Shown here piece after piece: positions 4,101 to 35,200 of a DNA stretch of 64,000 bases. The DNA comes from Podarcis cretensis (lineage: Eukaryota): contig OX638151.1 in the NCBI GenBank assembly GCA_951804945.1, positions 60,016,001 to 60,080,000 on the forward strand. Direction: 5' to 3'. Below the pieces are notes generated by a model. It saw nothing but the letters and a program-made list of their open reading frames with translations, had not been told where the DNA came from and did no database searches. The position numbers and the translations under genes are program-made. Position 1 is the stretch's first letter, and each line of letters opens with the position of its first letter.

Positions 4101-7100
4101 TGATATTTTGGATGTGTAAGCTGATAAAAAGCAACTTAACAAATTTATCATCTTGGTACAAGTTGTATCAGAATATTAAAACACAATACAGATGACATTC
4201 AACATATGCTGGGGTTATGTTACAGGGATAGTGCATAAAGCCACTATAGGAAAATATAGAATTATAGAATTGTAAAGATAAAAGGCACCCTGAGGGTCAT
4301 CTAGTCCAACTCCCTGCAGTGCAAGAATCTCAACTAGATCATACATGACAGATGACCATCCAACCTCTGCTTAAAACCCTCCAAGGAAGGAGAGTCCACC
4401 ACCTCTCATGGGAGTCTGTCCCCTCAATACCTTCATCCAAGTCATTATAAAGATGTATAAAGATGTTAGAACCCCGCAGCACTCCACATCCACATGTCCC
4501 TTTTTTCTAGGATGATGAGAAACCGTTAGTGAGCACTCTTTGGGTTTGGTCAGTGAACCAGTTACAAATCCACCTAACAGTCATCTAGTCCAGTCTACAT
4601 TTTACCAGTTTCTCAGCAAGAATATTACAGGGACTTTGTCAAAAGCCTTACTGAAATCAAGATACACTACATTCACAGCATTCTCCTGATTCACAAAGCT
4701 TGTAACTATCAAAAAGAAAGAAATGAGATTCATCAGACATGACTTGTTTTTGAGTAACCCATGGTGGGTCGTAGTAATCACAGTGTCCTTTTATAAATGC
4801 TCACAAACTGACTGTTTAATTCTGTTCTAGGACCTTTCCTGGTATTGATGTCAAGCTGACCTATTGGTAGTTATCTGGAACTTTTTTTCGTGTTTTGAAG
4901 CTGAGGACATCTGCCCACCTCTAGTCTTTTGGGACCTTACTTGTTGTCCAAGAATTGTCAAAGATTATAAGCAGAGGCTCTGAGTTTACTCCTGAAATTT
5001 TCTTTAGTATCCTTGAGTACAGCTCATCAGGCCCTGGAAATCTGAATTCATTTAAAGTAGCTAGGTGTTCCCTTACCACCTCTTCCCATCTTTGGCTGCA
5101 GCTCCTTCCTTGCATCATTTATTCTGTCATCATCAGGTTGGGCACTGCTTTTATTTTGGGTGCAGAGACAAAGCAGGCACTGAGCACTTCTCTGTCACCC
5201 AATAGCATTTCTCTGTCTACTCCAATCAGAGGATCTTGCTTCTTCTTTCTCTTGTTTTGAACATAGCCAAAGAAAACCTTTTTTACTGTTGTTAATTTAT
5301 CTTGCAAGCTTGAGCTCATTCTGAGCTTTGGCCTGCCTGACCTCCCTGCAACTCGTGTATACTCTTCCTTAGTGATTTCTCCTTTCTTCCATTTATTATA
5401 CATTCCCTTATACATTCCCTTCTTACATCTCAGCTAATCTGTAAGTTCATTATGAAGCCACAGTCGTTTATTTAGGTGCCTCTCACTTTTCTTACTTGTT
5501 GGAACTGTCTGTGCCTTCAATATTTCACATTTAAGAAACTCCCATCCATCTTGGACACCCTTCTCTTAAGAGTATTTCTGACCATGAGACCTCACATAGT
5601 AGTTCCTCAAGGTTTTTGAAATCAGCCTATTTAAAGTCCAGAGCGCATGTCCCATTACACTCAGCTTTCCTGTAGCTAGGTATCATATAACCCAAAAGGA
5701 CATGATTAATTTCTCCCAAGGTTCCCTATACTTTCACTTTGTCCATCAGTTCCTCTATGTTGGTGAGGACCAGGTCCAAGAGAGATGACCCTCTTGTTGC
5801 TTCTTCCACCTTATTGGAAATGAAATAGTGAGGCAATTGAGGAATTACATTCTTGGAAGAGTTTGAGCTCCAACAGATATCAGGGTAGTTGAAGTCTCCC
5901 ATGACTACTATACCTTTCCTTTTTGAATGTTTAGTAAGGTCACTTTTACAATTTTTACCCATATTCTCTCAATCTGCCTTCTATGTTCCAAGTCATGGAT
6001 CTCTTCACAAGTGTACATTTTCTTAACATATAATGCTACTCCTCTTCCCTTCCCGTTGTATCTATTTGTTTGGAGCAGATTGTACTCCTAAATTTCTATA
6101 TTCCAGTCATGAGTCTCATCCCACCAGATTTCAGGAATGCCTATTAGGTCATATTTGCCATCCTGCATTAAGTGCTCAAGTTCTAATTGCTTGTTTCCCA
6201 TATTCTGTGCATGAAGAATATAGAGAGTCAACTGTGTAGAGACAACTGAAACTATGGGTTATTCTTCTGCACACTGCTGCCTCTGTCCTCTTCCATAGAG
6301 AGTCACCTGCCACGACTACAAATCTCTTCCTTTTCTGGGGAGTGACAGGAATCATTCTGTACACTGTACCTTCCACTACCATCTTGGTGTGTTTGAGGTT
6401 TGCAACCACCGCACTTGCTCCTCTGGCTGAGAATTGGTGTTCGAGATGAGGGCATGGAACCAGTTTTGTAGTTCCAGAGACACAGTATGGCTCCTGAAAG
6501 TCCTGCTTTTTTGTGCCCCATTCCTCCAGGGGTTCACCTCCTCCACTGGGCAATCTTCCTCCTCCCTAGAGGCACCCTGCCTGCATCTCTGTTCCAGCAC
6601 AGTCCACTCAAAGCTTCTGATCCCAGGTTAGTTAGTTAATGCAGGTAAGTAAGTTTAAGTAATTCAAAAATGCCATTGCAAAGAAGTCAAACTCTTGCAA
6701 CTAATGGTACATGCCCCACAAATCCATAGAGGGAAGATGATGACATAGAAATCCAACTCCATATGAAATCTTTCCCTCCTACTATTAGATTGCACTTTTC
6801 CTCTGTTCACACTGTCTCTGTGTGTTTTAAATTCAAATTTAGTCATGTCTAGCTGGAAAGCAGACAATTTTGAGAGATGGATCTGTAAAATTTAGCCTCT
6901 ACTTTTAATGGCAGTAGCAGCTGCCACCCAAAGATATGCTCAGCATATGTGGGCACAGTTCCCTTGCATGACAACTGTTTCCTTTCTCCCGGTCCTATCA
7001 GCTGACAAATGAAACAACAATCTCTCGATCACAGCAAGCTCGTCTGATACTGGTTTTCTTCAGATATCATACTAAATCTTGGTCAAAAAAGTTTAACCAA

Positions 7101-13100: not shown

Positions 13101-16100
13101 CATACAGTGTCCAAACTGATAATAATGTGAAACACGGTGATTAAAAAACAAGAACCTAAGAAGAAAATTTCATGTCTTATTTCAATAGATTTCCCATGGT
13201 TTTAAATGAGAAGAACATAAAAGTGGCTCCAAGTAGATGGAAAAGCATTTTGCTTACATGCATTAAATACTGTCAAATTTTGGAATACAATGGAAATTAA
13301 ATGGACTCCCCCCTACTTAGTAGTTCGGTCACTGTATGTGTTTCTTTTTCCGCAGCCTTTTCAAAAATTGTAAACATCATTAATACAGGCTTTGAACAAA
13401 CACTTACCTAACTCAGGTTTCAGTTCAGTTGGTAAGCTTAATTTTCTAGACATCTTTGCTGAAAAATAACGTATAGTTTTATAATAAAGCTAGAATGATC
13501 ACATTTTAAAGAGTTTATGAAACTAAGAATTTAAGCTGTTGGTTTCCAAAATAAGAAATCATATACAACAGTTGTAAGCAAGGAAGGTATGCGCATTTAC
13601 ACATATATTTGTAACAGGTTTTAGTGACAAGTGTGCAGTCAGAGTATGGCAGTGTACCTTCTTTGGAGTTATGAACAGTTAGGAACATTAGTAGTTAAAA
13701 TTCTCAGAATCTCTGATGTCTTTATTGTAGTGCACTGCAAGTCATTATTTTGTATGATTTCCCTGGCACTAAATGGATTTAACAATTGAGTCAAGTTTAC
13801 TTAAGCCTCTTTCCAACCACCTCCCCCAAACAATGGAATACTAACACTACAAAAAGAAAACCGCTGAGCCACAAAAAATTGATAAATTTTAGAAAAATTC
13901 ACAGAATTACACTGTAAAGTTAAAGACCACAAGAGTGGCTGTGGCTACTGGGAATATATTGGAGACAAATTTGTATAGAAAATAAGTTCATGAACTATGT
14001 TCCTGTGGAAGGACTCTTTTCTCCACTGATGAGGCCAAGTTAGCCAGAACCACCATTGGCAGAGGGCAACTCCATCAAGCCCCTACCTGCAAGGAATCTA
14101 ACTGCTGTCAAACAGCACTGTTCAACAGAGGGAAGAACCATGTGGAAGAAGCATCCCTGACCCAATTAGGGTACCGTTGCTCCTCTAGTTGGGCGGGGAC
14201 AGTGTGCAGGTGCTTCCAGCCTATCCCATTGTCAAGGCAGAGACAAACAGAACCTGAAGCAGTCTGGTCCTGTGCTCTAGAATACATCTACATGTGGAAG
14301 CCAACCCTGCTGAGAATGCAAACAATAAGATTCATACATATTTGTAAGCTGTCTTGACATATGCAAACCACTTTAAGATTTTTTTGTTGAAAAGCAGGAT
14401 ATAAATGTTCTAAATAAATAAAACAAGGTAATACTATGCTGCAAGTAAACTGGACAGAAAAGTGAGAAGGTGATGGAACAGTCAAAGAACATACTGTACT
14501 AGTTGATACCTAAACTCCAAATATAGCTGGAGAAGCCTGTAATCTTTAGGACTGGTGAGCCTTTAAGACTACATTTCCCGTACAAACTTGCTCAAATGCC
14601 CCACTCTGAACCTGAGGCCCTTCCTGGGGTCTTTTCATTGACGGTGTCTAAAAGTATGCAATTCCATCTTCAGGAAGGTTTGTTTGGCTCTCCTTTCTTT
14701 CAATAGGTTAAGATCATTTTGTTTAGATGTGCTTAAAGTGGGGTGGTGGGGGAGACAGGAGAAAGGGTTGCTGCTGTTTTGTTTGTTTTTAGTTTGTTTT
14801 ATACCGGTTGTTGTAAGATGCGGTTTTAAATTTTATTTTGTTTTATGTGATGTAAAATTGTTATGCTTTATGTTTTGTTTGTATGGTATTGATTTTAACC
14901 TTGCTAGTTGAAAAACCAGTTCTGAGAGATTTAGTGTAGATTTTAATATGGTCACATATTACACTTAGATATCATTTTGAACAAGTTGATTTTTAAAGGC
15001 CACTTACAAGTATGATTTTTAAAATTTTGCTAGTTTTGCATTTGCTTGGTAAAAAACGTATTTATTCATCCAGGTCACAGTGGAGACCTTGACAGCCATA
15101 GGAGAGACAGACAACGACACATGCACACACAAAGAAAATTTGTAGCCATATTAAAAATGCAAGCAAATTTCAGTGAGTTCTGAAGACCTGATCAGAAAAA
15201 TATATAAAGACACTCATTATTACTGGAGTATTTTAATCCATCTCACCATCAAAATTGCACTCCACATCAGCCAATAGTAAGTATTCAGTGAAAGGCACCA
15301 CAACAAACAGCTCTCAAAGAGCCCCAGACAAATCCCATCTAGGACGCATCAAACCCCAAAGCTTTAGATCTCATCAGATAGGGACAATGCACACATGCCT
15401 ACAGTAGGAATGTTACTGGTGTTTTCAATGAAAGTAGCTCACTAAACACAGATCTCAAGAACTCTAGATAAAAGCAAATAAGAAATTAAATTCTTTTAAA
15501 TCAAAGTCACCACTCATTGTTTAAAATAGGCAGCCACTATCAGAAGAATCTACCTGAGAAGGCCAAACATAACATCTAAAAAGTCTGGTACTGAATTATG
15601 ACCAATACAGATTTAAAATTGTACCAAGAAACATGACCACAGAACATAAGCAGGTGATCTAATCCTGCTCACTGAAAACACTGACCTTTGCCATAGAAGC
15701 AGCAATTGTTATGGACAAATTAGTATAATTCACACAGTACCTCTCTTGAAAGGAGTTCATAAATTATAATTATTGGGCATATCAGCCTAGCATGTAGATA
15801 AAACTGACACAGTGAGAACAGCATATAAGCAACAACTCAGAGGGTAAACCAATTGTCTCTTTTCCTTTACTCCTTTGCCACGCCTGCAGAATTTGTACCA
15901 TACCAACTTAACTGCAGTTTAAATCAGTAGGCAAAATTAACTAGCTATACATGTAATGGTGCCTGATTAATTACAGGAACCATTTTGAAAGCAGTTCATA
16001 TAGTTAATCATCTCTAGCAAAACAGTCACCTGCAGTCCACACCAACAGAAAATACCTTCTACTGAGGAGAAGGGCTTGCTTGTGGTTCCCCGTGTTTATG

Positions 16101-19100: not shown

Positions 19101-19955
19101 ATAATTCTCTTAAAAATAAAAATACTATACCCTTTTCTATAAAATTATTCATTTTTTGATCATCATCAGAATTGTTGGGAGAACCAGAACCTAAATGAGT
19201 GAAGATAAGAATGAAAGGGACATACGAAATGGATATTAACAAAAAAGGATGCATACAAAAAAATTATGACAGATGACAAAATGAGAAAGACTATATATCC
19301 TAATCCATATCATATGCAACAATAAACCCCTAAATAAACACCTCTTTGGGTATTATGGATGATTTATAATTTCAGGCTTTTTTCCTGCAAAAAAAGAGGG
19401 GAGTATTCACCTATATCTCCTGCTTTATGCATAAGGACATCTACATTTGAGACAGATAACTTTTGCGTCTTCCATGTTTCACTTTCATCATACACAGCTT
19501 TAATTTTTTGAACTTATGCTGGTGTTACAATTTTCTAGTACAGATGAGACCATACAACCAAAGGAAAGCATAGAAGATACAGATTTTCTGATGGGAATTG
19601 GGAAATGGGAAACAAAACAGTCTGGAAAGGTTGCTTGTGTTCAGATTAACAAAAATATTCACATGATAATAATAGCAGGGATTCTAGTTCACATTTTAAA
19701 TGTCAATTTTTGTATTATCAATATTGCCAAAATAATTCAGAAGAAATAGCTTCATTAAGGTCTAAGGTGTGTTCCAGTGCACTTATCTCTGTGATAACAA
19801 ATGAAAATACAGCTACTTTTGCCAATTCTCTGTATTTCAATCCAAAAGTGAAAAGATTTGAAGTGTGGTTGTTTTGCTATTAATTACTTTAAAAACTAAT
19901 TGGAAATAACATCCTTTGTTTACCTGTAAAAGTGAATTTTGTAAATAGTTTTCTG

Positions 19956-19995
<40 letters not shown>

Positions 19996-22403
19996 TTATT
20001 TGTACCCCGCCCATCTGGCTGGGTTTCCCCAGCCACTCTGGGCGGCTTCCAACAAAGATGAAAAATACACTAAAATGTCACATATTAAAAACAGGGCTGC
20101 CTTCAGATGTCTTCTGAATGTCAGGTAGTTGTTTATCGCTTTGACATCTGATGGGAGGGCGTTCCACAGGCCCTCTGCCTGGTTCCCTGTAACTTGGCCT
20201 CTCGCAGTGAGGGAACCATCAGATGGCCCTCGGAGCTGGACCTCAGTGTCCGGGCAGAACGATGGGGGAGGAGACGCTCCTTCAGATATACTGGACCGAA
20301 GCCGTTTACATATATTTATCATGTTTTAACTAAGAACATAAAAAACCTTCCCTCCCTTCTCTATGCATACCAACATGGTACAGATGAAAATAAAAATGAT
20401 ATACGAATTATATCAGGAACTACTACTTTCAATAAGAATATTTGCTGAATTCCTTGGAAATATTACATTCATTCTCTTCTAGTGATGGGAGGCACTCTCC
20501 TCCCTTACCCAAGTCAGATTCATGATTGGGTTCAGCAAATTAATACACAGGATTAAAAAATTGTGGGCTTAAAGTACACAAAAAGCCCCTGTTCACACTC
20601 CTGTGGTGGCATTGTAAGCCCCCCTCCCCAGCTTGCTTCCTGGATTCTGTGATTATGATGATTTTGCTGCTGCTGAAACAGCAGTCAGGGAAGCAGAGGG
20701 AGGAGTTTTTTTTGCTAGGTCCAATTAAAATCTAATCCACTGAAAAAGTCTCAACTCCTATTTAAGAAAAAGATAACAACTTGCCAAGCTGCATATCTGA
20801 AATAAAGATTGTAAAGTTTGATGAAATCACTACTCACTCCTTGCTTCCTATTCTTATACTACTTTCCACCCTGTTGGTTAATTTTACTATAACAGCAGCA
20901 GAAGTGACAAAAGTGGGATGACCTTTTCCCACTTAAATTACCTCTGGCAAAGAACAACGAAAGCTCCTACAAATAAAAGATCGTGATGAGAGTAGGAGTT
21001 AGAACACATTTCTACTGTGAATAATCTCTTCTTGAAACAGATAGCCCAAGAGACATAAAACACATTCCCCTTATAATATAGTATTTCCTATAGTAATGCA
21101 TTCTAAACACTGTAAATAATGAACAATGACAAATATATAAGAATGGCTTTGAGGCAAACCAAGTATTCAGCTGTATGTACTTGTCTGAATTGTGTATATT
21201 TGAGAAAACCCCTGTAAAGTTCAGTGTCATAGTAAAAATCCTTCTGGAGCATGAAAACAAAAGAGAAGAGAAGCCCGCTACAAGGCGTTTTGAAGTACTA
21301 TTTGTTCTAAAGCGTTTCCAAGAACAGTTCATTACCTGAGGTGGGTGACTTGCAACGATCCTCTTGTACAGCTGTACCTTCATTAATATCACAAAGACCT
21401 GCTGTAAAATACAAAGAACACAACAGGTTTCAACAGCTGTGGACCACTTCTAATTCTTGACACAAACATGACACATAAGGTATTTTTGTGCCCACTGGGG
21501 AAACAATCAAATCCGATACTTAATTATATTTTTAACTAAGCGTTTTGACAAACGTGTTTTGCTGTTCAAAGTATCAGTGTTTCTTCTTTGGGGAACAGGA
21601 TGATTATGAAGATTCAGGGAAAAGGGGAGTTGGTATAGATGTGCATGAAAGCCATTTTTCTATGTAATATATGTGATTAATGCAAAATTAATGCAAAATT
21701 ACCTGTATTGTAAACAGGTATATTACAAAGAAAGGTAACCAAGTTGAATATAAGAATGAACATGTAAGGACAAATAGATTACATTTAAAAACCACCACAG
21801 ACTATAAAAAGCAAGCTAGAATTAGTAATATTTAACATGTTTAAGTATTTGCCTACCAGTGTCGTCAAAACAGATCAAATTTTGATGAAAGGCCTAAAAA
21901 TATATACGTCAAATATATTGATCTATTTGATAACCTGTGCCCTTCTAGGCCCAAGACTAGGCCCAAAACCACTAATTTCAGAAAACACTATGGTGGTGAA
22001 AAATCCAGGACTGTGGTGGTTGCTTGGAACTCTTGCTCAATCAAAGTGACAGTCAACATGTGATTTTGGCATCTAGACCGTTGATTAGGATAAAGAAAGC
22101 ACTGTATCCACTACAAAACCGAAGTAGCAACAACAGGCATCACTACAGATGATGAAATACTTGGGCTGCTTTGGAAGGAGATGCTGTTATGAAAGGTGCT
22201 GAAGTGTAAAGGTGACACTGAAAGGCAGAAGTACAAAGCCTCACAAAGCCTCATGTCAATCTGTCGTTTGTTATCTTATAGTTCTAGGTTTCTCTAGGTC
22301 CATGGGCTTTGCAATAAACAAGGCTGTCCATAATGTTGCTTGCTAAGCACTGAAGAGCTCTTGATTTTCTTTGTAAAATCACAGGAGTGGAGGCTTTCTT
22401 AAC

Positions 22404-22449
<46 letters not shown>

Positions 22450-25400
22450 TGTGTGTGTGTGTGTGTGTGTTAGTTATAAATAAAACTACATTATTCTACT
22501 TTAATATCTAGAACTCTTCAGAACTCCACAGGCAGCTAGGCAGCCTCATGCTGGAAGACCTATCAGAGATCTGTAAAACCTATGAGAGGATACACACAAG
22601 CATTGGAAAAGTTGATGTGGCGAAAAAAAGAGAAGCAAAAGTATTCCTGACAAAGAGCCAGATTTAGATTTCCTATTATAATATTAGTTATTATTATACA
22701 CCATTCACCATAAGGCCCTTGTTAAAAACAGTTAAAACAGATTACATCTAAAATATGTATCTCAGGTATCAAAGGCCAGAGTAAAGAGGTATGTTCTAAA
22801 TGAAATCCCAGCCAGTAACCTGGCTATTGTATTTTGGACCAGTTGCTGTTTCCAAGTCATCTTCAAAGGCAGCTCCACATTGAGTATATTGCAATAATCC
22901 AGCCTGGAAGTTATCAGTGGATGGAGTATGATGATCATGCTATCTCAGTTCATAGGGGGCTATAGCTGTAAACCAGTCAAAGCTGGAAAGAGGTATATCT
23001 AAGCATCAAGGACAACTGAGCCTCAAATGACAATACTGGATCCTGGACTATCCTCCCCTCCCAAGCTGTGCAGAACACGCCATGCCCCCCACATCCCGGA
23101 CTCAAAAACTTAGAACACATAATACCTGTGTTTTCAGGATTCGCCTTCAACTTATTGGGCCAATCCCACCCATCATTGTCTCCAAGCATTGGTCTAGCAC
23201 CCACATATTGGTGACACCTCACATCAAAACCCCTGATGAGAGCTCCCAGCATTTTCAGATAGATGTTACATAGCATGGAGGACAAGATGAAACCTACAGC
23301 TCCACTCACATGGTGCCAAACAATGGTCCTCCCCAAACTACTCTCTGGAAACAGCCCTAGAAGCAGGAACAGAACCAATGAATTGCATTGCCCTCCATTA
23401 CCCTCCATAGCGAAGAGAGAACAGAGAGCTTCATTTCACAGAGCTGCTCAAAACCTGAATTACAGATTAATCCAGAGACCACAGACCAACACAGAGAGAT
23501 AGAAATTTTAAGAAATGCACAGTACAATACTGGGGCCAGTACACACCCTGCCATTTGCAATTACACCTTTGTAGTTCAGACATGTCTGCACTTGCACCCC
23601 AAGAACAGGTAAGGTCACTTTTACTTGAATGAAACGTACGGCATGTATGATATTGTATCATAATTTAACTATACAGTGAATTCTTAATGAGTGCCTGGCT
23701 TTAAGTCCAGCACAGCAGGAGACACGCCTAAGCCTCTTTTGCAAAGTTCACATTTTGAATTTTGCCATTTACGGAGGGGATGCTTTAAAATTCACCCACA
23801 CTTATTGTGTAGAAGTATTTGCAGAAAATCACTTCTAGGCAGTATCTGATCTCAGGAGAGCCCACCACAAGAAAGAGGCATCCTGAACACCAGGAAAAAA
23901 GGAAGGATAAACTTCGGAGATTCCAGGGACTACTAGCAAATAAGACAAGCAGGAAAAGTGCACTAAATGGAAAGGAGAAACAGAAGGCTTTCCCAGCAGG
24001 ATAAATGGGTCTTTATAACAAGTTTTAGGTTTGTTTTAAATTGATTTGTTTTTGTGTTTTTAACCATTTTAAATTATATGTAAATCACCTTGAGACAGTG
24101 GTTTAGAAGGTGATTAATAAATTAACTGTAATACCAATACTAATATTGTCTGGTGTCCATACAACACACTCAACAATCACAGCTCTGACTTCACTCGCTG
24201 GCTAAAAAGCACTGACAGAGGCAGCCAGGCTAGCTCATTTCACAGAAATTGCTTAGAAGGATAACTGTACATTTTTGCATCATAACTTTCTTTCCAGGAG
24301 GGTTAGAGATTTACTTTTTTATTAAAAATAAAAAGGAAAGTTCAGTGTCTTGGTCCTTCGTCCAAGGGCACCAATGAAGGTCTTTGTGGGCACCACTGCA
24401 CATTTGTGACTTGTATTCTATTATCTACTAATGCCACTTTTTTTTACTGTTGCTTGCAAAATAGATGAAGGATGTAATCTGGATCTTATTGTACCCAATA
24501 TTCCATACTGATAGTATCTCAAGTAACACTCTATAATTATATTAATATAGAATTAATCTCTGCCGATATGTTAGTGAAAGAAGCTGAAAAGTAAAGGCTA
24601 TGGTAAAATATTCTGGGTGACGAATGCATATAACCTAATCAAGTGGATGTTAAAACACTTTATTCTTATGAGATGACTTACTTATATAAGAGGTGCGAAG
24701 TTTTTTCACAGACTCTGAATATAAGTTAGAGAGGCCACACATGCAAGAAGCCACAGCCAGCATGCCTTATTGAAGCAATGAGAAAGGAAAGACAAAAACA
24801 CCAACACAGTATATTTGGAGAAAGAAAAAAAATCTACATAAAAACTTTAAGATCCAAGCAAACAATGTATTTGTGGGAAATTGTTAGACAGCAACTGAAA
24901 TACAACAAATCATGCATGTGCCAGAATTCACACAGTGTAATATAATTTACTTGTTGTCTTACATAATATTTATAAAATTTTCCATTAATACTAACAATTT
25001 AATGACAAAACAAACCTATCCCTACTCAGCTGTTTAACTGTTTCATTTAAGAGGATATATTACTAATATTATAAAATAGCCAGACTTACTTGTACTTATT
25101 CTTTTAATAAAACTACAATTATTTAATCATCTTTAATATGGAACTACCAGGAAAGGCAGGTAGGAGGAGCCATAATTGCTGCTTATTCAACAGCCATAAA
25201 TAGTTTTACAACCATTACGAAGTGGTAATTCATGGAATATTGCAGTTTATATCTGAAACATTCGCAGTGTTCCATGTGGCTATTTTAGTAATTCATAATT
25301 GCATATAAGTACACAAAAAGTTCCATTGGTTGCTACCAGAAGAGCAGATCTTCAGTGCCTGATGAATGTTATTGGTTGAATATTGGTTCCAAAGGCAGGA

Positions 25401-28400
25401 ACAGAACTTGTGAGAAGCAGGCAGTTCTGACATCCAGACAGCAAAGAGGGTGCCATGGAGATACTGCCATGATCAGGATCTCCAACGGCCACAGACGCTG
25501 AGGCCAGAAGGAAGCTAAGAGGACCACTGTGGCTTTTCCTCCCTGATATTATGAAGGACTCAGGTAAGAACAGAAATCAAGGAACGGTGTACAATAAGCC
25601 CAGGCCCAAGGAGACAGCAGTTTACTGAACCTCTACTAATAGGCTCTAAACTATAGTATTAATTAACTATGAAACATATTTTTATACTACAAGGAGGCAG
25701 AGTCCCTCTCTGCCTTCAGGATCTTTTTTAAAAGTAGAAGGAAATGGTATGGACTTTGTAAAGGATTTTGGTTCAACAAGAACAGATGCCCCCTTAAATG
25801 GTGCTGAGGTAAGTTCTGCAGGAGGGCAATGAAGTCTAAGGCCATTGCAAAGCAAAAGCACATAGTGGGAGTCATGAGAGATATAACCCATCAGGCCCAG
25901 GCAATGGTGAAGGCAAATGTTGTTAAAGGTCCAGACTGTCCACAGATATAATAAATGGATTCATCCCTTTCCATGGATAAGGGCTGCCTATGAGATGCTT
26001 AGTGCTTGTTTATGAAGCAAATGCTGAGCAAAGATCTTACATTTAGAGGAACAAGGAAAAGCTGCCTTAGCAGGCACTTTAAGTTTATTCAAAGGCTGAA
26101 TTTGGGCAGGAGGCATGGCTATTGCCACCAGAGAGCACACTGACAGCCATCCCTACTCTTCAGAAAGCCAGAATGCTGAGGCATGGATACATAGCACACA
26201 CCAAACCAGAAGGTGCAGTGTTCCAAAACAGCTAAGAAGAATTGCCGAGGTTCAAATACCAACAAAGCTGCCTCCATCCTCCACTGAAGCAGTTACTGGT
26301 GAAATCAGGATGAGAGAAAAAAGGCAAGCAGGCAAGGCAAAGGGGTTCTATTTATGGGAGAGATGCAAGCAGCAAAGAATGTAGAAAACAGCCAAGAAAG
26401 AAGGGCTCAGGTGACAAGAGACAGGCTGAGAGAAGAAAGTGCTGGAGCAGTCGTGAGGAGGAGAGAAGGTTAGGAGTGACAGCCATACTGCCCTGGTATA
26501 CTGAAGGGAGAACGGGATGGCTTAGAAACAGTTAAGAGGAAGGCAAATACTGGAACGAAGAAGAAAAATTTAGAATTTAGAACACCTGAGAAGAGAAAGA
26601 ACAGGAGCTCAAAAGCAATGTGACTACTTTGATGAAGGCAAGAGTCAACTAGGAGCTGCCTACTTCATACAAGTTCTGTTCCCACCTTCAACCACCAGGT
26701 GGAGCCAATACTCAACCAATGACCTTCACAGGAAGTGTGCCACATTAAACATGGCATTTGAAGCAGAGACATATATCCCCAAACACTTGGGGGAAGAAGC
26801 ATGTTCTCGCTACACTATTACTTCTTTCACATTCTTCCTCCTGTGCAAGAATGGTGTACTGTGGTTACTGCATACTATAAGGTCCCAGGGCTGGTTACAC
26901 TAAAAGGTCCCAAGGTAATAGAAAATAAAGCATTCAAAAAAGATTAAAACAAACTATGCTCACAACAGGTGTCTTTAAGCATATGACAAAAAGGTGTATA
27001 ATGAAGGTGACAGATATATTTCTGTGGGAAGCTATTCCACACAGAGAATGCTCTCAGCTCAGGTCACAGCCCGAGACCTCTAAGGACAGTGGAACTACCA
27101 ACCTCGCTGATTTTAACACCCAAGGAGGTCTGTAGGAAAGGAGGTGGTCTTTCAGATATTTGGGGACTAAGTGAGCACCATGAACTAAGCCCAGAAACAA
27201 ACCAGCAATCAGTGCAGCTCTTTTAGAACAGGGCTTGAAGGGAGCCCCAGTCAGTAGTATGGCTGCTGGAGGTTACCAGAGCATGGAGTACTGTGGCCAA
27301 GTTGTCTCTGTGCAAATTAGACTGTAACTGGCGAAGCATCCAGAGCTGGAAAAAGGCATGCCTAGTTACCAAGGCCAACTGAGCCTCCAATGACAAGGCT
27401 GAATTCAGTAGCACCCCCCAGCTACGGACATGCTACTTCTAGGGAAGTACAACCCCCAACCATGACAGGTCCCCACATCCCAGAATCAAGAACCTGGGAC
27501 ACAGAATACTGCTTTCTTTTCAGGATTCTGATTCAGTTTATTGGCTCACACACAGTCCATCACCACCTCTAAGCATCAGTCTAACATCTTGACTACCTCT
27601 CCCAATTCATATGCAACAGAAAAACAGAACTGGGTATCATCTGCATATTGGTGACACCAAATTTCCTGATGGCAGTTCCCAGTGGCTTCATATAGATGTT
27701 CCAGGGACAAAATAGAATACTGCAGGACACCACAGGACAACTCTCATGGCACTTAACAGTAGCCTCCCATAACTACTTTCTGGAAACAGCCCTGGATGAA
27801 GGATTGGAACTACTGAAGTACAGTGCCCCCAACCCCCACCTCCCTGAGATGATCCAGAAGGACAGTGGGAGGTCAAGGAGAATGAGCTGGCTTGCACTCT
27901 TCTCACCTCTCTCCTGACAAATGTCATCAACCAGGGTGTCCAAGGTGGCTTCAGTACCATAACTGGGCCTGAAGCAAGACTGAAATGGATCTAAGCAAAG
28001 AGTTTTTTCCAAGCATGTCTAAAGCTGTACTGCCACAACCCTCCCAAGCGTTGTCCAAAAATTAGTTATTTGGTACTGGGCAATAGTGATTTAACATTTC
28101 TGGGACAGAAAATGTCTTCCTAAGGAGGAGCCACACCACCATGTCCTTCCAGGCAGGTGGTCAGTCCCTCTCCTCAAGTGAAGCATTAATCACTCATTGC
28201 AAACCCAGCTAACCATCTACGGCTAGCTCTCAGAAGCGGAGATGGGCAAGCATCAAAGGGCAGTTGGTTGGCTGCACTTCTTCAAGCAGCTTATCCACAT
28301 CTTCAGGTATGAAGCAACTCTAAAATTTTCTGTTCATATGCACTTCCTCCTCTGAGAATTTTAGGCTTGTGGTTTGCTGAATTTATGTGATTGCTTCCAT

Positions 28401-29188
28401 GTGCCAATACACACCTTAACAGATCAAATACAGCATGCTGAAATAATTGTGTCCAAAAATGAAGGGGTTAAGTGCTGCGTGGTTCTGTGAAGCAGTTAGT
28501 TCAGAATAAATTAACAGGGCATTTATGATAACAGGGTGTGATAGCACAAAGGAAGACGAAAAGTAAATCTCAAACAGGGAAAGGCAAGACAATGGAAGAT
28601 GGTTGATGTAACACATAAACCTTGGTAAAGAATAACACTTTTTGTATAAAAAAGTAATGAAGTAGAATATTATATCTTTGAAGGTGACTCAGAAAGTACA
28701 ACTAATACAGAATGTGGCAGCTAGACTGGCGACTGGGTGTGGCCGCTGGAACCATGTAACACTGGTCCTAAAGGATCTTCACTGGCTCCCAGTACATTTC
28801 CAAGCACAGTTCAAAGTACTGGCGCTGGCCTTTAAAGCCTTAAGCAGCCTCAGCCCAGTATACCTGAAAGAGCATCTCCATCCCCATCACTCAGCCCAGT
28901 CACAGAGGTCCTCCTCAGAGGGTCTTCTGGCAGTTCCTTCACTGTGAGAAGTAAAGTTACAGGGACCCAGGCAGAGGGCCTTCTAGGCAGTGGCACCCTC
29001 CCTGTGGAATGTGCCCCCCCCCCATGTCAAGGAAATAAACAACTACACAACTTTTAGAAGACATCTGAAGGCAGCCCTGTATCGGGAAATGTTTGACATT
29101 AATGTTTGACATTTTATTATGATTTTATATGTTCTGTAAGCTGCCCACAGTGGCTGGGGGAAATGGGGTAATAAAGAAGAAGAAGAAG

Positions 29189-29220
<32 letters not shown>

Positions 29221-32200
29221 TGCTTATTATATATGCTAAATTTGGCAGTCTGGAATACTCTTAAAATGAAGACTGTTTGCCTACCATAATCAGATGATGT
29301 TTTCTAAAAAGAAGCCCCTACAGAATATTGTCAACATATAAACCTTTTGGTTTGTGCAAGTTACTTTCAAAGAAAAAGCTAGTCGCATGGACTCCTAATC
29401 AGCTTGCGGTCCAGTAAGTAGAAGACCAATACAAAAATTTATCAGCAAGTATCAAGTGTATGACCTTACCTCCAGATGGTTGTCTGCTTTTACGTGGAGA
29501 TCGGGGTTCCCTCCTATAAGGATCATTAGAACCATACAATTCAACAGTGCCAAGGTTTAAAAGTGTGGTCTTTTGGATGTAATCAACCATTGCGATACCA
29601 TTACAATTGCCGAAAACTACTCTGAAAGAAAATTTATTAGAAAGAATATGATGGCAATGAATGATTGATATCCAAATATATGCTTATGTTAAGTACAACA
29701 TTTTACTTTCCATTTTTAGGAATTAGTTGAACTGATTATTTTTCAAAATCTAAAATCTATTCTTATATAACATTTAGAAATGAAAATTTGCATGAAAAAC
29801 TATTCAAAGAACAATTTATTTTAGTAGTAGTTGCTGAGAATAAAACCAATAGACTATTGCCTTACTAAATAGCAAACCTCCACCTGCCATAGAATGATTA
29901 CTGTCCACTGCTTACTCAAGGGTAACTGTTTTGTTGCAGTGTGGGAAGAAGCTAATAGCTGCCTTGTTAGTTTGTCCTTGACATGCATTCGTGTTTGGCA
30001 TGGTTTTACATTAATATTTATTTCTTATAAAACAGGTTTAAGTAAATAAGCAGTAAGAACAATACATAATAAGATGCAACTCTAAACAACAAGCAAGATA
30101 AAAACAACAGAATGAGCTGGAAACACCAACAGGAGACTTTTGATTCTGAACTGTTGCGATTAACCAAAAAAGCATTTTCACATCTATATAATAGGAGCTG
30201 AGACAATCCACCATCTGGCTGCAGAAGAATACCAAAATATAATCTTCCCCATTCCTGGCTGCTACACTTGAGATTTGCCTCATCACCACTGATGACTCTG
30301 TACTTCTACTTTTTACAAAACGTCTTACACCTCCATGCCTCACCCAGAGGTTTCGTATGCTGGTCTGATTGTCTTAGTCACATCATCTAACCTTCTGCTA
30401 TACAATTACCCAAATGAATACCCCACTGTACATCCAACGTTCAATTACTTCATTCTCACCATCTTGTTTTAATGTCCGACAATTGACTAATTTGCTTGTT
30501 ATAGCAGCACATTATTGCATTCTCCCATATTCTTTCTGAATGTCCACCTAGCCTAGATACAACCAAAAAACTAAACAAAAAAAGCCTCTTCACAAAACAG
30601 CTGGTAGTCTAAAAATATACAAGACATTCAAGAAATCAGAGATGGCACAGAAGATTGTGTTCTACGCTGAGAACCATTTGTCAACTTTTCTGAAAGTGCT
30701 GTGTACACATCTAACAGCAGAAGCTATCTTCCCCATGTAATATACGAAGATGGTACAACATTATTGTAATGAAAGGGAACCTTGGACAAAGACTGAAATG
30801 TGTTTGTGGCTGAATACCACAATAAATGAGAAGGCCCTTTAAGTACCTTTTTACTGAAAACATGGAAACAAGTAGCATATCAAAGCAACATGAATCCAGT
30901 AGTTTAGCAGTAACGTCATATTCCTTCTGCGACAGGACAATGGGATTTAAGGAAGAGAAAGCACAGCACCAAATATACTTACAAGCCATAGGCAGAGTTG
31001 ATTGCAAGGCTTGTTATTTGCTGAGGTGGTTCTCCACTCACCCATACTAACTGGATAACCAGCTCAACCTGGTAGCCTGGAGACTGCTTGAGGGAAGAGT
31101 TTTTAACTCTGCAATATACAGGAAAGGTAGACAACATTTATTCTTGTGGAAGTCTGCCAATAAATTTTACTAGAGTGGGAATATTTCATGACTGATTGTA
31201 TTTCTTACTGCAAGTTAGTACAGCTTCAAATGCTTACTCTGGAACAGATTCATATGATGTGGGGGAGACTTTTTAATGTAAGTGGCCATGTTCTGATGTT
31301 GAGAAGGATCACATGCAAGCACTGGAGAGCACATTTCCCCCCCACCCCTGGTCCCGGTGTACATAAATTGCTTAATCAGTCACATTTTAACATATTTTCC
31401 GATCCTGGCATGTAAATGATGGTTTGCACACAGCAGAGCTTGCTTAGTTAAAATGAAATGGCAAACTATAATTTGCTGAAGTGATTGCAAAATTAAGCAT
31501 TATATCATAAGGACTCACAATACTTATTATACATTTATTTATTTTTCTTTAATTTAAAGCATTTATAAAGCATTTATGGAAACAGAAATTCAGTAATAAC
31601 AGAGACCAATCTTATGAGTCAGGGACAGCCAGGACAAAATGGTATATCTTTACAAAGTGTCTAAAGCAACTGATAGATGATGCTTCACATATGGCAGAGG
31701 AAAGAGCATTTCACAGTGCAATTAGTTCCGCTCTCTGCCAAGTCTCAATAAAGTAGAATTTGGCGGCTTGTCATGACTGGTGAGCTAGACTTGAGAGTTG
31801 GTAACTTACCTAAATTAATCTCTTGAGTCCATGGCTCAACTGAAATTTGAACCAGGAATCTGCAGGCTCATAACTTATTCTCTATCTCAAATATGAAGGA
31901 ATAGGAAACAGTACAGGAAAGTGAGATAAGGCAGGAGATTCTAAGTTAGATGTGTAGTTGGGGGCATTTGGCATCCGATTCTCTCTGGAGGACTGAGAAT
32001 GGACATGCTGTTTTTTAAGAAAAGCTGCAGTTGCTATATATCAAACTTTGGCAAATACAGCTATTGAAACACATAAGTAGTTTTATAGGCTCCTGTAAGC
32101 AATATATAATTACTTTGTACATTGATACAAGCTCAATACATGTGTCTTCTATTAGCGCACCTTTGTAAAGCATACACTAGGAGGAGGTATGAGTAACCAT

Positions 32201-35200
32201 ATCCCAAAGCAGCACATGTCAAAAGCCAAAAGTTTTTTCTACAATAAGATTAAGCAGTCTATGAAGGTAAGATACAGTATTTAGAAATACTAGCCTTACA
32301 CTTACTTTAAACATGGGACGTTATCCCGAAGCCCATCAGATGAGCTGCTGCTAGTGGATGGATGAGACTGGGGAGCAATGGACTGAGGGTTGGAACCTGT
32401 GCCTGGAGTAGGCAGTGGTGGCACTTGCTCAGAATCTGGAGACTCTATATAATTTATTTCATACAATAGCCGTACTTCAAGCATCTGCAAATGACAATAG
32501 AGAAGACATGACACAGTCCGAGAGTTCTTTGCACTGCAAATTTTGCAGTTGCCAATTCACTACTTTGGTCTCAACAACTTCCATAAAGTTAAATACAAAA
32601 CTTCTTATTAAAGACAAGTGGATGGCCTCAACCATAGTATCAAGCTGCAATGTATCAATCAAATACCAGACAATAAGGTACCAAGAGTACTATGAGGTTT
32701 GTTTGACACTATCCTGAGAGATGCTGGGAGCTGCAGGTAAATAACATTTAGAACAGCACGGATTTGCCATTCCTGTTTTAGAGAAACACTTGCAGCTGAT
32801 TCTGTGGGCTGTGACCACCTCCTCAGAACTGAGCAGTAACACAGGATCAAGAAATACTTCTGAGTGGTGCACCTTCTCATTTAAAGGCAATGTAACCACA
32901 TCTAGGAGAGGAAATAGCAGCATCTTTATAGACCTAGATTGTCCTGTCATCATGGTCCTGTCATCATTCCTATCAGGAATAAGCTTCAATTTGTTAGTGC
33001 TCATCCAGTCCATAACTACATATGTTCAGGCATTAATTAAATGCACAAACAATTGTTTCTTGGTTTGATGGAAACAAATAAAGCTGGGCGACATTGTGTA
33101 TATTGAGAAGAACTGCTGAACATTCTCCCTCCATAGCTGAAGAGCACTGTGGACATCCATCTCGGGTGATCCAGAAAATTTGATCAAATACCATGATACT
33201 ATATCAGGCATAGGCAAACTCGGCCCTCCAGATGTTTTAGGACTACAACTCCCATCATCCCTAGCTAACAGGACCAGTGGTCAGGGATGATGGGAATTGT
33301 AGTCTCAAAACATCTGGAGGGCAGAGTTTGCCTATGCCTGTACTATATTGGCAATACAGATAATGAACAAGTTATACCCTCCCTGTTCAAATCTAGATGA
33401 AGACAACCAAAGCATTACGGTGTTCTCAAACCCTCCCAAATATTTACTGATATGGGTCAACAGTCTGCCTCATCCATCAATTTTTTGATTTGATTATGAA
33501 CAACTTATGAAACCCTCCAACCACTGTCTATGATTTAATGGGTGAAAAAACTGAACAAACCTGTATAAAAATATTAGCTGCACTCTCTTCATAAGGCCAG
33601 GTATAAAGTACATGTGACCAAGGAGCTACTATGAGATTTTACCTTTAAGCAAGCATCTAATGCAAGATTAAATTGTTCAATCTAATTTCAATTTATCATT
33701 TTCAAAATAAAATGGATTTCAGCTAAATTTTAATTGTATTTGTAATGAGTAAGCCTAATGTTTTCAGCATATCCTATTCCCAAGAAAGTGACATAACCAC
33801 TGAGCATGGAACAAACTAGTCAAAAAAATGTTCAAGCTAGTTTATACTAGTTTATATATTGGCTAAATATAGGGATTAACAAATATATAAATGCATGTCC
33901 AATATAGATAACTGTCAATTACCGGAATCACATCTGTTGTAATTTCTTGTTTGCTGAATCTGTAAACAATGACATGTGCAGAAACTCCTGCAATGCACAG
34001 CATCCTGCTTTCTGCACACCACGAGATGATCTGAATGGCATATGGGTCTTCATCTACTATGTCTGTGCTAGGTCTGTCGTCCTTATTTTTTGATTTTTCG
34101 AAGACTTTAGCTGTTTTTAGTTTGTACAGCACTTGCAATGTTACTAGGAATAAAATAAAAAATAATTACCAACGTAATTTTGTAAACAAAAATATTGTTC
34201 AAATAAGGCCATTCTGAAACCATGGTAATACAGTGCTCACATTTCCATTTAAGCTGATTGAAAGTTCCTCTGCGGGTGATGTGTGCATGTTTGCTAGTGA
34301 GATAGATATCAATTTGTATTCCGCACACATGTGGTTCCAAAATATAACACTTTTCAGGATGTTGAGGAACTTCAGTGGGAAGACAAGGGTCAGGAGGGGC
34401 CTGATAATTTATATGCAAATCATTGCATGCAGTCCTTTCGATCCTGGGCATTGTGTATTATGGCCAGAATCCAAAGGGCACAGAAGCAGAAAAGCTTTGC
34501 AGCCTTCCCTTATGCAGAGAAGGATTGTGCCCTCAATTATGAAATGCCATTAAGACAAAATATATAATCAAAAATAGTGTTACAGCACCTTCTATGCTCC
34601 AGGATTTCAATTTGTGTTTCAAGGAGGTGATACGGGTTGCTTAGGAGGTATCAAGTAACTATCATGTATGATTTGAAACCTCATCTCCTCCATCACCTTC
34701 CTCACTTCCTGTCTTTCATATCAAACTTTTGGCTCAGAGGTTAATTACACTCAAGTCCTATTTAAGCTGAGCAGACAATTTAGTCACAGAGGCAGGGCAG
34801 AGGGATTGTGGTGTTAAGGGCACACTAGCAGAGCCCATACGGTTCTCCTGCTGGTGTGCCTTTACAGCCCGACTCTCACAGCCACCCTGCCTCATCCCCT
34901 ACAGCAACCTGGTAAGAAGCAGTGCCACCTCTTATGGGAGAGGCAGTTCTGCAGATGCTGGCTATTCCTGGTCACAACTAATTTAGGACCATTCATTCCA
35001 ATGGGAATTAAGTACAGCAGATTTGAGCAAACAAGGCGAGTAAACTCCAAAAGATGTCATCTATAAGGCAACAGTTTAAGCAAAACACTCACTTGCAGAG
35101 GCATCCCAAAACTTGATCGATCCATCTGCATGCCTATCAAAACAAGAATTTTTTAAAGCAAAATCTCTTTAGAAAAGAAATAGCAAGGCCGATGAGATTT

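What the first reader, a model, noticed from the sequence alone, without database searches (positions are those of the whole stretch)
24682..24765. Hidden in-frame 84-nt exon in tomosyn-1 that resembles the tomosyn-2 hypervariable insert
Seen: in intron 18 the minus strand reads pyrimidine tract...aataag | GC ATG CTG GCT GTG GCT TCT TGC ATG TGT GGC CTC TCT AAC TTA TAT TCA GAG TCT GTG AAA AAA CTT CGC ACC TCT TAT ATA A | gtaagt. It is phase 1-1 like its neighbours, has no stop and adds 28 aa. It is too short for the ORF track. Recalled knowledge: the canonical b/m/s tomosyn-1 isoforms lack this peptide, while STXBP5L has DNFCMRGLSNFYPDLTKRIRTSYQS at the equivalent position, aligning with ASCMCGLSNLYSESVKKLRTSYI. 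Inference: an ancestral cassette exon predating the STXBP5/STXBP5L duplication, giving an extra-large tomosyn-1 with a new basic kinase-like motif (KKLRTS). It may already appear in automated gene models.
Basis: partly seen in the sequence, partly recalled or inferred. Interest (0 to 1): 0.82.

Follow-up and report, generated by a model that had tools for sequence, protein, structure and literature searches.

The report
Conserved hidden cassette exon in tomosyn-1
An 84-base, frame-preserving exon-like segment in an intron of the tomosyn-1 (STXBP5) gene is conserved from carp-like fish to birds and this reptile-like genome, so it is very probably a real, rarely used alternative exon, but no RNA containing it was seen here.

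Summary
On the minus strand an AG acceptor, an open 84-nt phase 1-1 segment (24765-24682) and a GTAAGT donor lie between tomosyn-1 exon 18 (ends 29470) and exon 19 (starts 21401).

It is not a chance pseudo-exon. A colinear bird contig carrying exons 17 and 18 holds the same segment. It is 79/84 identical, against 80% for constitutive exon 18. Four of the five differences fall on third codon positions. AG and GTAAGTCATCTCAT are kept, and the intron becomes unalignable beyond about 65 nt upstream and 40 nt downstream.

About 30 unspliced ORFs from bird-type and fish-type contigs keep the same 27 codons, with residues that fit the same splice-site positions. One Cyprinus carpio gene model splices the cassette donor to the exon-20 homologue.

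Expression is unproven. Four RNA runs gave no exon18-cassette junction. The mRNA contigs of two other species join exon 18 directly to exon 19.

No STXBP5L sequence could be obtained with the tools.

Verdict: most likely a deeply conserved, low-inclusion or tissue-restricted cassette of the tomosyn hypervariable region. It is a new member of a known kind, of moderate interest.

The parts
24682..24765 (-). Candidate 84-nt cassette exon, phase 1-1. It encodes (G)MLAVASCMCGLSNLYSESVKKLRTSYI plus one base of the next codon.
   Evidence: 79/84 identical to bird locus L001, with 4 of 5 differences at third codon positions. The same 27 codons are present in about 30 ORFs from other species.
24766..24805 (-). 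Conserved 3' splice-site region: pyrimidine tract, a possible CTCAT branch site, and a weak AAG-type acceptor (A at -3).
   Evidence: 34/40 identical to the bird locus. The contigs of two other species (X4, X5) stay alike up to 24804 and then diverge. Bird-type ORFs keep VSPSFLFSLL[HR][KE] unchanged.
24668..24681 (-). Conserved 5' splice site GTAAGTCATCTCAT.
   Evidence: 14/14 identical in the bird locus. It reads as 'SKS' in nearly all ORFs that run through the unspliced DNA, which fits A|GTAAGTC.
29470..29621 (-). Constitutive exon 18 (..VVFGNCNG..PRKSRQPSG), the upstream neighbour; it ends in phase 1.
   Evidence: mRNA contigs of X2, X4 and X5 end their match exactly at 29470. 80.3% identical to L001, with 20 synonymous and 4 non-synonymous codon changes.
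21336..21401 (-). Exon 19 (AGLCDINEGTAVQEDRCKSPTS), 66 nt, phase 1-1, the downstream neighbour.
   Evidence: The loose ends of the X4/X5 mRNA contigs at 29470 are the reverse complement of this exon's homologue. It matches P0020 residues 140-160.
19131..19190 (-). Exon 20 (GSGSPNNSDDDQKMNNFIEK), 60 nt, phase 1-1.
   Evidence: Its homologue follows the cassette directly in carp model P0029.
13408..13458 (-). 51-nt hypervariable-region exon (KMSRKLSLPTELKPEL), phase 1-1. It carries the homologue of the tomosyn-m1 K730 peptide.
   Evidence: The peptide SLPTDLKPDLDVKD comes from PMC3948876 Table 1.

Best explanation
The segment is a genuine, evolutionarily old alternative cassette exon of the tomosyn-1 (STXBP5) hypervariable region. 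When included it keeps the frame and replaces one Ala by 29 residues, a net gain of 28 aa (G-MLAVASCMCGLSNLYSESVKKLRTSYI-T/S). The insert sits directly after ..PRKSRQPSG, in the region that the literature says holds the PKA site (position 724) and the SUMO site (K730). Its weak AAG acceptor, its nucleotide conservation above that of neighbouring constitutive exons, and its conserved intron flanks are the usual signature of a regulated exon with low or tissue-restricted inclusion. That would explain why the sampled transcripts skip it. Shown: the anatomy, position, conservation and codon-position pattern, and skipping in the sampled RNA. Inferred: that it is spliced in anywhere, and what the peptide does. 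My guess is that a hydrophobic stretch with a conserved Cys, followed by the invariant basic Ser/Thr-rich SVKKLR(S/T)S, modulates membrane association or phospho-regulation of tomosyn.
For: Gene identity: the window encodes GKQVKDGKKPEPCKPILKVEYKTTR and SLPTELK, which match the tomosyn-m1 peptides printed in PMC3948876. Anatomy. Chance count. Orthologous bird locus L001 is colinear with window exons 17 and 18 and the cassette. Cassette 79/84 identical against exon 18 at 122/152 (Fisher p=0.004). Third-position differences are 4/28 against 22/50 (p=0.011). Four of the 5 cassette differences are at third positions and 1 is non-synonymous. Identity is 85% in the 40 nt upstream and 14/14 at the donor, falling to about 50% beyond 80 nt. 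In two further species (RNA libraries X4, X5) the exon plus short flanks differ at 7/132 and 8/139 positions, against 11/131 and 10/131 for exon 18. Fifteen bird-type ORFs have 1 variable position in 28 cassette residues while the flanks vary. Ten fish-type ORFs keep 27 codons, with a K/E-D pair at the acceptor position and SKS at the donor. P0005 and P0020 carry the exon-19 homologue downstream. NCBI's Cyprinus carpio model cypCar_00036225 (P0029) joins the cassette end to the exon-20 homologue.
Against: There is no RNA evidence of inclusion. One search found no joint 29470->24765 in any of four runs. The X4 and X5 mRNA contigs go from exon 18 straight to exon 19. The 5.4-kb X2 mRNA contig shows no cassette piece. 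Raw RNA reads (X19) cover exon 18 at about 6.5x and the cassette at 0x. The cassette appears in RNA libraries only as short unspliced contigs. Three word searches and one exhaustive phmmer search found no protein in which the cassette is flanked by exon-18 sequence. The carp model may be purely ab initio. Synonymous sites are more conserved than in exon 18, so part of the constraint is not on the protein. ORF databases hold only open frames, so species with a broken copy would be invisible.
Confidence: 0.72

Rival explanations
1. It is a conserved non-coding intronic element, for example a splicing-regulatory or decoy pseudo-exon that controls choice among the hypervariable-region exons. It is constrained at the RNA/DNA level and is never translated.
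For: Nucleotide conservation (94%) exceeds that of constitutive exons 17 and 18 (87% and 80%), and synonymous sites are about 3-fold more conserved than in exon 18. No inclusion junction was found. An exonic UGCAUG (24740-24745) is conserved in the bird.
Against: Four of 5 bird-squamate differences are at third positions. The frame is open and the length is exactly 27 codons from fish-type to bird-type sequences, with conservative residue changes. AG and GT are kept at an 84-nt spacing. There is no Rfam match, and the fold z-score of -1.24 is unremarkable.
Confidence: 0.15
2. It is a real exon in fish and/or birds but is no longer used in this lineage, so it is a silent relic here.
For: The RNA of this species' close relative (X2, X19) and of two other species shows only skipping.
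Against: Splice sites, frame and sequence are intact in the window. The surrounding intron is unalignable with the bird while the cassette is 94% identical, which indicates ongoing purifying selection in both lineages.
Confidence: 0.08
3. It is a chance pseudo-exon: an accidental AG...GTAAGT pair around an open 84-nt stretch.
For: Such arrangements do occur. There are 27 AG...GTRAGT pairs of 45-200 nt on the minus strand, 10 of them divisible by 3.
Against: Only two are open in phase 1-1 and the other ends at a true exon's donor. Chance cannot explain conservation across fish-type, bird and squamate-like sequences.
Confidence: 0.02

Closest known systems
Alternatively spliced hypervariable-region exons of tomosyn-1 (s-, m- and b-tomosyn-1; Groffen et al. 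2005, as summarised in PMC3188574 and PMC3948876)
   Same: Same gene and same region, directly after the exon ending PRKSRQPSG. It is short and phase 1-1 like the 66-, 60- and 51-nt exons of the window, so any combination keeps the frame.
   Different: It is not part of the three described mammalian tomosyn-1 isoforms. No transcript with it was seen here. It is more conserved at the nucleotide level than its constitutive neighbours.
The extra hypervariable-region cassette(s) of tomosyn-2 / STXBP5L (xb-, b-, m- and s-tomosyn-2), one of which is repressed by SLM2/T-STAR (PMC5199341)
   Same: Tomosyn-2 has one more isoform than tomosyn-1 (PMC3188574), which would fit a fourth cassette. Tool-derived fish sequences share GLSNFY with that peptide.
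   Different: No STXBP5L sequence could be fetched, so position, phase, length and homology are unverified. Whether the SLM2-regulated exon is the counterpart is unknown.
Conserved alternative cassette exons as a class (criteria of Sorek & Ast 2003 and Yeo et al. 2005, cited from my own knowledge)
   Same: Length divisible by 3, exon identity above that of constitutive exons, conserved flanking intron of about 40-65 nt, and a sub-optimal acceptor.
   Different: The defining observation, both inclusion and skipping in transcripts, is only half met: skipping was seen, inclusion was not.

Membership tests
Tomosyn-1 (STXBP5) hypervariable-region exon | Lies in the STXBP5 gene, not STXBP5L | tested here: met
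   The window encodes ..GKQVKDGKKPEP|CKPILKVEYKTTR (42728-42648) and SLPTELK (13438-13418). These match the tomosyn-m1 peptides PHGKQLKDGKKPEP, PCKPILKVELKTTR and SLPTDLKPDLDVKD of PMC3948876 better than the tomosyn-m2 peptides. The K730 peptide is stated there to be absent from tomosyn-2.
Tomosyn-1 (STXBP5) hypervariable-region exon | Position between the exon ending ..PRKSRQPSG and the first known variable exon, on the coding strand | tested here: met
   The same order holds in bird locus L001 (exon 17, exon 18, cassette) and in fish-type ORFs (cassette, then the exon-19 homologue).
Tomosyn-1 (STXBP5) hypervariable-region exon | Frame-compatible with the neighbouring cassettes (phase 1-1) | tested here: met
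   84 nt against 66, 60 and 51 nt, all phase 1-1.
Conserved alternative cassette exon | Splice sites conserved at the same positions in other species | tested here: met
   At DNA level in the bird: AAAG|GT.. and A|GTAAGTCATCTCAT. In the other ORFs this is inferred from K/E followed by G/D, and from SKS. One ORF (P0028) reads RKS and may lack the GT.
Conserved alternative cassette exon | Exon and flanking intron more conserved than constitutive exons; length divisible by 3 | tested here: met
   94% against 80% and 87%. Flanks 85% (40 nt upstream) and 100% (14 nt downstream), dropping to about 50%.
Conserved alternative cassette exon | Both inclusion and skipping seen in transcripts | tested here: inconclusive
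   Skipping is seen in X4 and X5, and no cassette piece appears in the X2 mRNA contig. No inclusion joint was found in 4 runs, but only one was raw reads, at about 6.5x on exon 18, and the tissues are unknown. Carp model P0029 uses the donor, but its evidence base is unknown.
Counterpart (ohnologue) of an STXBP5L hypervariable exon | Significant similarity to the STXBP5L exon at the equivalent position, with the same phase | not testable with these tools

The most novel reading that the evidence does not exclude
Fish and sauropsids retain a fourth, ancestral hypervariable-region cassette that gives an 'xb-type' tomosyn-1 absent from the three-isoform mammalian scheme. Its conserved Cys-containing hydrophobic half and invariant SVKKLR(S/T)S half, inserted in the region of the PKA site, would form a switchable membrane-association or phosphorylation module expressed in a restricted cell type.
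Probability: 0.25. Interest if true: 0.55.

Novelty: new member of a known kind. Interest (0 to 1): 0.4.

Why it matters
Tomosyn is a brake on SNARE-dependent exocytosis, and its hypervariable loop is where PKA phosphorylation and SUMOylation tune that brake. A deeply conserved extra cassette in tomosyn-1 would add an isoform that current functional work on s/m/b-tomosyn-1 does not consider. If it matches the tomosyn-2 cassette, the modular design of the loop would date to before the gene duplication. It is also a clean example of a conserved exon that RNA-based annotation can miss when inclusion is rare. The impact is that of an isoform-level refinement, not a new mechanism.

Tried and rejected
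2. Every search used single-exon references, so full-length isoforms (outside 0.55-1.75x query length) were out of reach.
3. The exhaustive phmmer search with the 31-aa read-through returned only unspliced ORFs. Word searches with P0019 region 173-214 and P0023 region 31-72 returned nothing new.
4. PDB: no match to the cassette or to a large exon.
5. Pfam: nothing on the cassette, only WD40-type hits on an N-terminal exon.
6. The structured-RNA reading is rejected: no Rfam hit and a fold z-score of -1.24.
7. UGCAUG is not enriched in the window (54 found against 53 expected).
8. Scans of GTDB genomes and IMG/VR found no relatives.
9. Paper searches for cassette or STXBP5L tryptic peptides and for an 'xb' tomosyn-1 found nothing. 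PMC3077652 is not held.
Before comparing L001 I checked it for Alu/7SL (none). I took it as avian because of an LTR motif I recognise from bird genomes and because it is colinear with the window's exons.

Full report
OBSERVATION. On the minus strand the window reads ...tgtctttcctttctcattgcttcaatAAG | GCATGCTGGCT...CTCTTATATAA | GTAAGTcatctcat. The segment runs 24765-24682 and is 84 nt long. The AG is at 24767-24766 and GTAAGT at 24681-24676. The inner 27 codons are open and read MLAVASCMCGLSNLYSESVKKLRTSYI. An in-frame TAA sits immediately upstream, so the open frame begins at the acceptor.

Exon 18 ends at 29470 (..PRKSRQPSG plus one base). Exon 19 is 21401-21336 (66 nt). Exon 20 is 19190-19131 (60 nt). 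A further 51-nt exon lies at 13458-13408. Inclusion would turn ..PSG-A-GLCD.. into ..PSG-G-MLAV...TSYI-T-GLCD.., a net gain of 28 residues.

GENE IDENTITY. The window encodes GKQVKDGKKPEP/CKPILKVEYKTTR and SLPTELK. These match the tomosyn-m1 peptides printed in Table 1 of PMC3948876. One of them is the K730 peptide, which that paper says is absent from tomosyn-2. An N-terminal exon gives WD40-type Pfam hits. The gene is therefore tomosyn-1 (STXBP5). CR1-like and BovB-like retrotransposon ORFs suggest a squamate genome; that reading rests on my own knowledge.

CHANCE. I scanned both strands for a pyrimidine-tract AG followed 45-200 nt later by GTRAGT. The plus strand gave 12 candidates and the minus strand 27. 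Requiring a length divisible by 3 and an open phase 1-1 frame left 0 and 2. The second survivor ends at the donor of a true exon (HADGSIKFWDASA). The anatomy alone is thus uncommon but would not settle the matter.

CONSERVATION, DNA LEVEL. A JGI metagenome contig (L001) matches the window's minus strand in three colinear blocks. These are exon 17 (31114-30972, 86.7%), exon 18 (29627-29465, 80.4%) and the cassette with its flanks (24828-24646, 87%). Before comparing it I checked its origin. It has no 7SL/Alu match, and it carries an LTR motif that I recognise from bird genomes. I take it for a bird STXBP5 locus, not a human one.
- The cassette proper is 79/84 identical, and the five differences fall on codon positions 3, 1, 3, 3 and 3, giving one amino-acid change, A to T.
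- Exon 18 has 30 differences in 152 nt: 20 synonymous and 4 non-synonymous codon changes, with 22 differences at third positions.
- The cassette is significantly more conserved than exon 18, both overall (p=0.004) and at third positions (4/28 against 22/50, p=0.011).
- The chance of at least 4 of 5 differences falling on third positions is 0.045.
- Identity is 85% in the 40 nt upstream and 14/14 at the donor, then falls to about 50%, the level of unrelated sequence, beyond roughly 80 nt.

High exon identity, conserved flanks, a length divisible by 3 and a weak AAG acceptor are the classical marks of conserved alternative exons. I cite that from established knowledge (Sorek & Ast 2003; Yeo et al. 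2005), not from a tool.

CONSERVATION, OTHER SPECIES. Logan contigs of two RNA libraries from two other coded organisms (X4, X5) cover 24673-24804 and 24666-24804. They differ at 7/132 and 8/139 positions, then become unlike the window. Exon 18 in the same runs differs at 11/131 and 10/131.

I ran an exhaustive phmmer search with the 31-residue read-through of the segment. I chose that tool because the query is too short for the word search to reach anything longer than 54 aa. It found five short ORFs at E between 2e-10 and 7e-4. A profile word search then raised the number of hits to 19, and cluster listing added further bird-type variants. All but one are ORFs called on unspliced genomic contigs from Logan, JGI, ENA or NCBI.
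- Bird-type sequences share more than 100 nt of upstream intron with L001. Across 15 of them only 1 of 28 cassette positions varies, while the flanks vary freely.
- Fish-type sequences read ..K|D-TLHKKSCMSGLSNFYSESVKKLRSSY(V/I/L)-SKS... The 27 codons are the same in number. A codon pair that fits ..A|G.. sits at the acceptor position, and SKS fits A|GTAAGTC.
- More divergent versions exist (P0021, P0027, P0028, P0030, P0032). P0028 reads RKS and may lack the GT.
- P0005 and P0020 carry the exon-19 homologue about 65 codons downstream (12/21 identical). This shows the same gene and the same exon order in a compact genome.
- P0029 is named by NCBI 'hypothetical protein cypCar_00036225 [Cyprinus carpio]'. 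It reads MSGLSNFYSESVKKLRSSYL|SSGSPCNSDEDSKQKFIDR.., so the cassette donor is joined in frame to the exon-20 homologue (11/19 identical). At least one automated gene model therefore already uses this exon. I do not know whether transcripts supported that model.

One caveat applies to all of this. ORF catalogues contain only open frames, so lineages with a broken copy would not be seen.

EXPRESSION. The single read-laying run covered 24600-29600, which includes exon 18 and the cassette. No run showed a joint from 29470 to 24765.
- The mRNA contigs of X4 (706 nt) and X5 (2989 nt) leave the genome exactly at 29470. They continue with the reverse complement of CTGGTCTTTGCGACATTAACGAAGG.., which is the exon-19 homologue and still encodes AGLCDINEG. 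These transcripts skip the cassette.
- The 5.4-kb X2 mRNA contig shows no cassette piece.
- X2, X4 and X5 hold the cassette only in short contigs that run into the intron. These are pre-mRNA or DNA, at 12-30% of the exonic depth.
- The raw reads of X19, a close relative of the source, give about 6.5x on exon 18 and none on the cassette. That only bounds inclusion to roughly below 30% in one unknown tissue.
- No protein in which the cassette is flanked by exon-18 residues was found. Full-length isoforms could not be searched, because exons may not be joined and the word search is bounded by query length.

THE STXBP5L CLAIM. The literature held here confirms three tomosyn-1 isoforms and four tomosyn-2 isoforms, all differing in the hypervariable region (PMC3188574; PMC3948876). 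It also confirms an SLM2-repressed cassette in tomosyn-2 (PMC5199341).

The results were 13/22 identical at 31 bits and 13/22 at 33 bits. The last matched residue on the window side is an intron read-through residue. The tool-derived fish sequences share GLSNFY with the recalled peptide where the window has GLSNLY. That makes the recollection more credible, but homology and an origin before the duplication remain unverified.

RIVALS.
- A structured RNA is unsupported: there is no Rfam hit and the fold z-score is -1.24.
- A purely non-coding conserved element is the serious rival, because synonymous sites are unusually conserved and inclusion was not seen. The third-position bias, the exactly preserved 27-codon frame over great evolutionary distance and the preserved AG/GT spacing argue against it.
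- A relic exon is unlikely, because the surrounding intron has diverged completely while the cassette has not.

MECHANISM (inference). The cassette would lengthen the hypervariable region, which the literature ties to regulation: a PKA site at position 724 and a SUMO site at K730, six residues apart (PMC3948876). Invariant residues across all the sequences aligned are M, S, V, K, K and L, with near-invariant S, Y, E and S. This gives a hydrophobic first half containing a conserved Cys and a basic, Ser/Thr-rich second half. A role in membrane association or phospho-regulation is plausible but untested. An exonic UGCAUG (24740-24745), conserved in the bird, might contribute to regulated skipping. 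The motif is not enriched in the window.

VERDICT. It is a new member of a known kind, the tomosyn hypervariable cassettes, and may already be present in automated models. Interest is moderate.

Noticed in passing
window 24740-24745 and 24911-24916 (minus strand): A UGCAUG (Rbfox-type motif) lies inside the cassette, where it encodes Cys-Met and is conserved in the bird locus. A second copy lies 146 nt upstream. The motif is not enriched in the window overall (54 found against 53 expected).
   Followed up: partly
window 28608-29108: A repeat whose ORF reads ..LHWLPV..FKVLALAFKAL.. is laid at depths of thousands in RNA run X2 and hundreds in X19, on both strands. It is an abundant interspersed repeat, not part of the gene.
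   Followed up: no
window 60437-60829 and 5726-5962 (minus strand): Retrotransposon ORF fragments: a BovB/RTE-like reverse transcriptase and a CR1-like endonuclease (GDFNYPDICW). Together they suggest a squamate genome. This identification is from memory, not tested.
   Followed up: no
window 13408-13458, 19131-19190 and 21336-21401 (minus strand): All three other hypervariable-region exons I mapped (51, 60 and 66 nt) are phase 1-1, so any combination with the 84-nt cassette preserves the frame.
   Followed up: partly
L001 1000-1140: The bird contig carries an LTR-like motif (ggtatggaataccc...attaaccctgtcctggccgaacccaggaca) in the intron upstream of exon 17. I used it to judge the contig avian. 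In the bird the intron between exon 18 and the cassette is only about 1.5 kb, against 4.7 kb in the window.
   Followed up: partly
window 35093-35133 (minus strand): A constitutive WD40 exon (HADGSIKFWDASA) also begins with GCATGC directly after its acceptor, like the cassette. An upstream in-frame AG at 35166-35165 makes a 72-nt alternative candidate, probably meaningless.
   Followed up: partly
window 24600-24681 (minus strand): The intron just downstream of the donor is rich in UAAG, AAUAAA and UUUUAA (UWAA-type) motifs. PMC5199341 links such motifs to SLM2/Sam68 repression of the tomosyn-2 cassette. They are only partly conserved in the bird.
   Followed up: no
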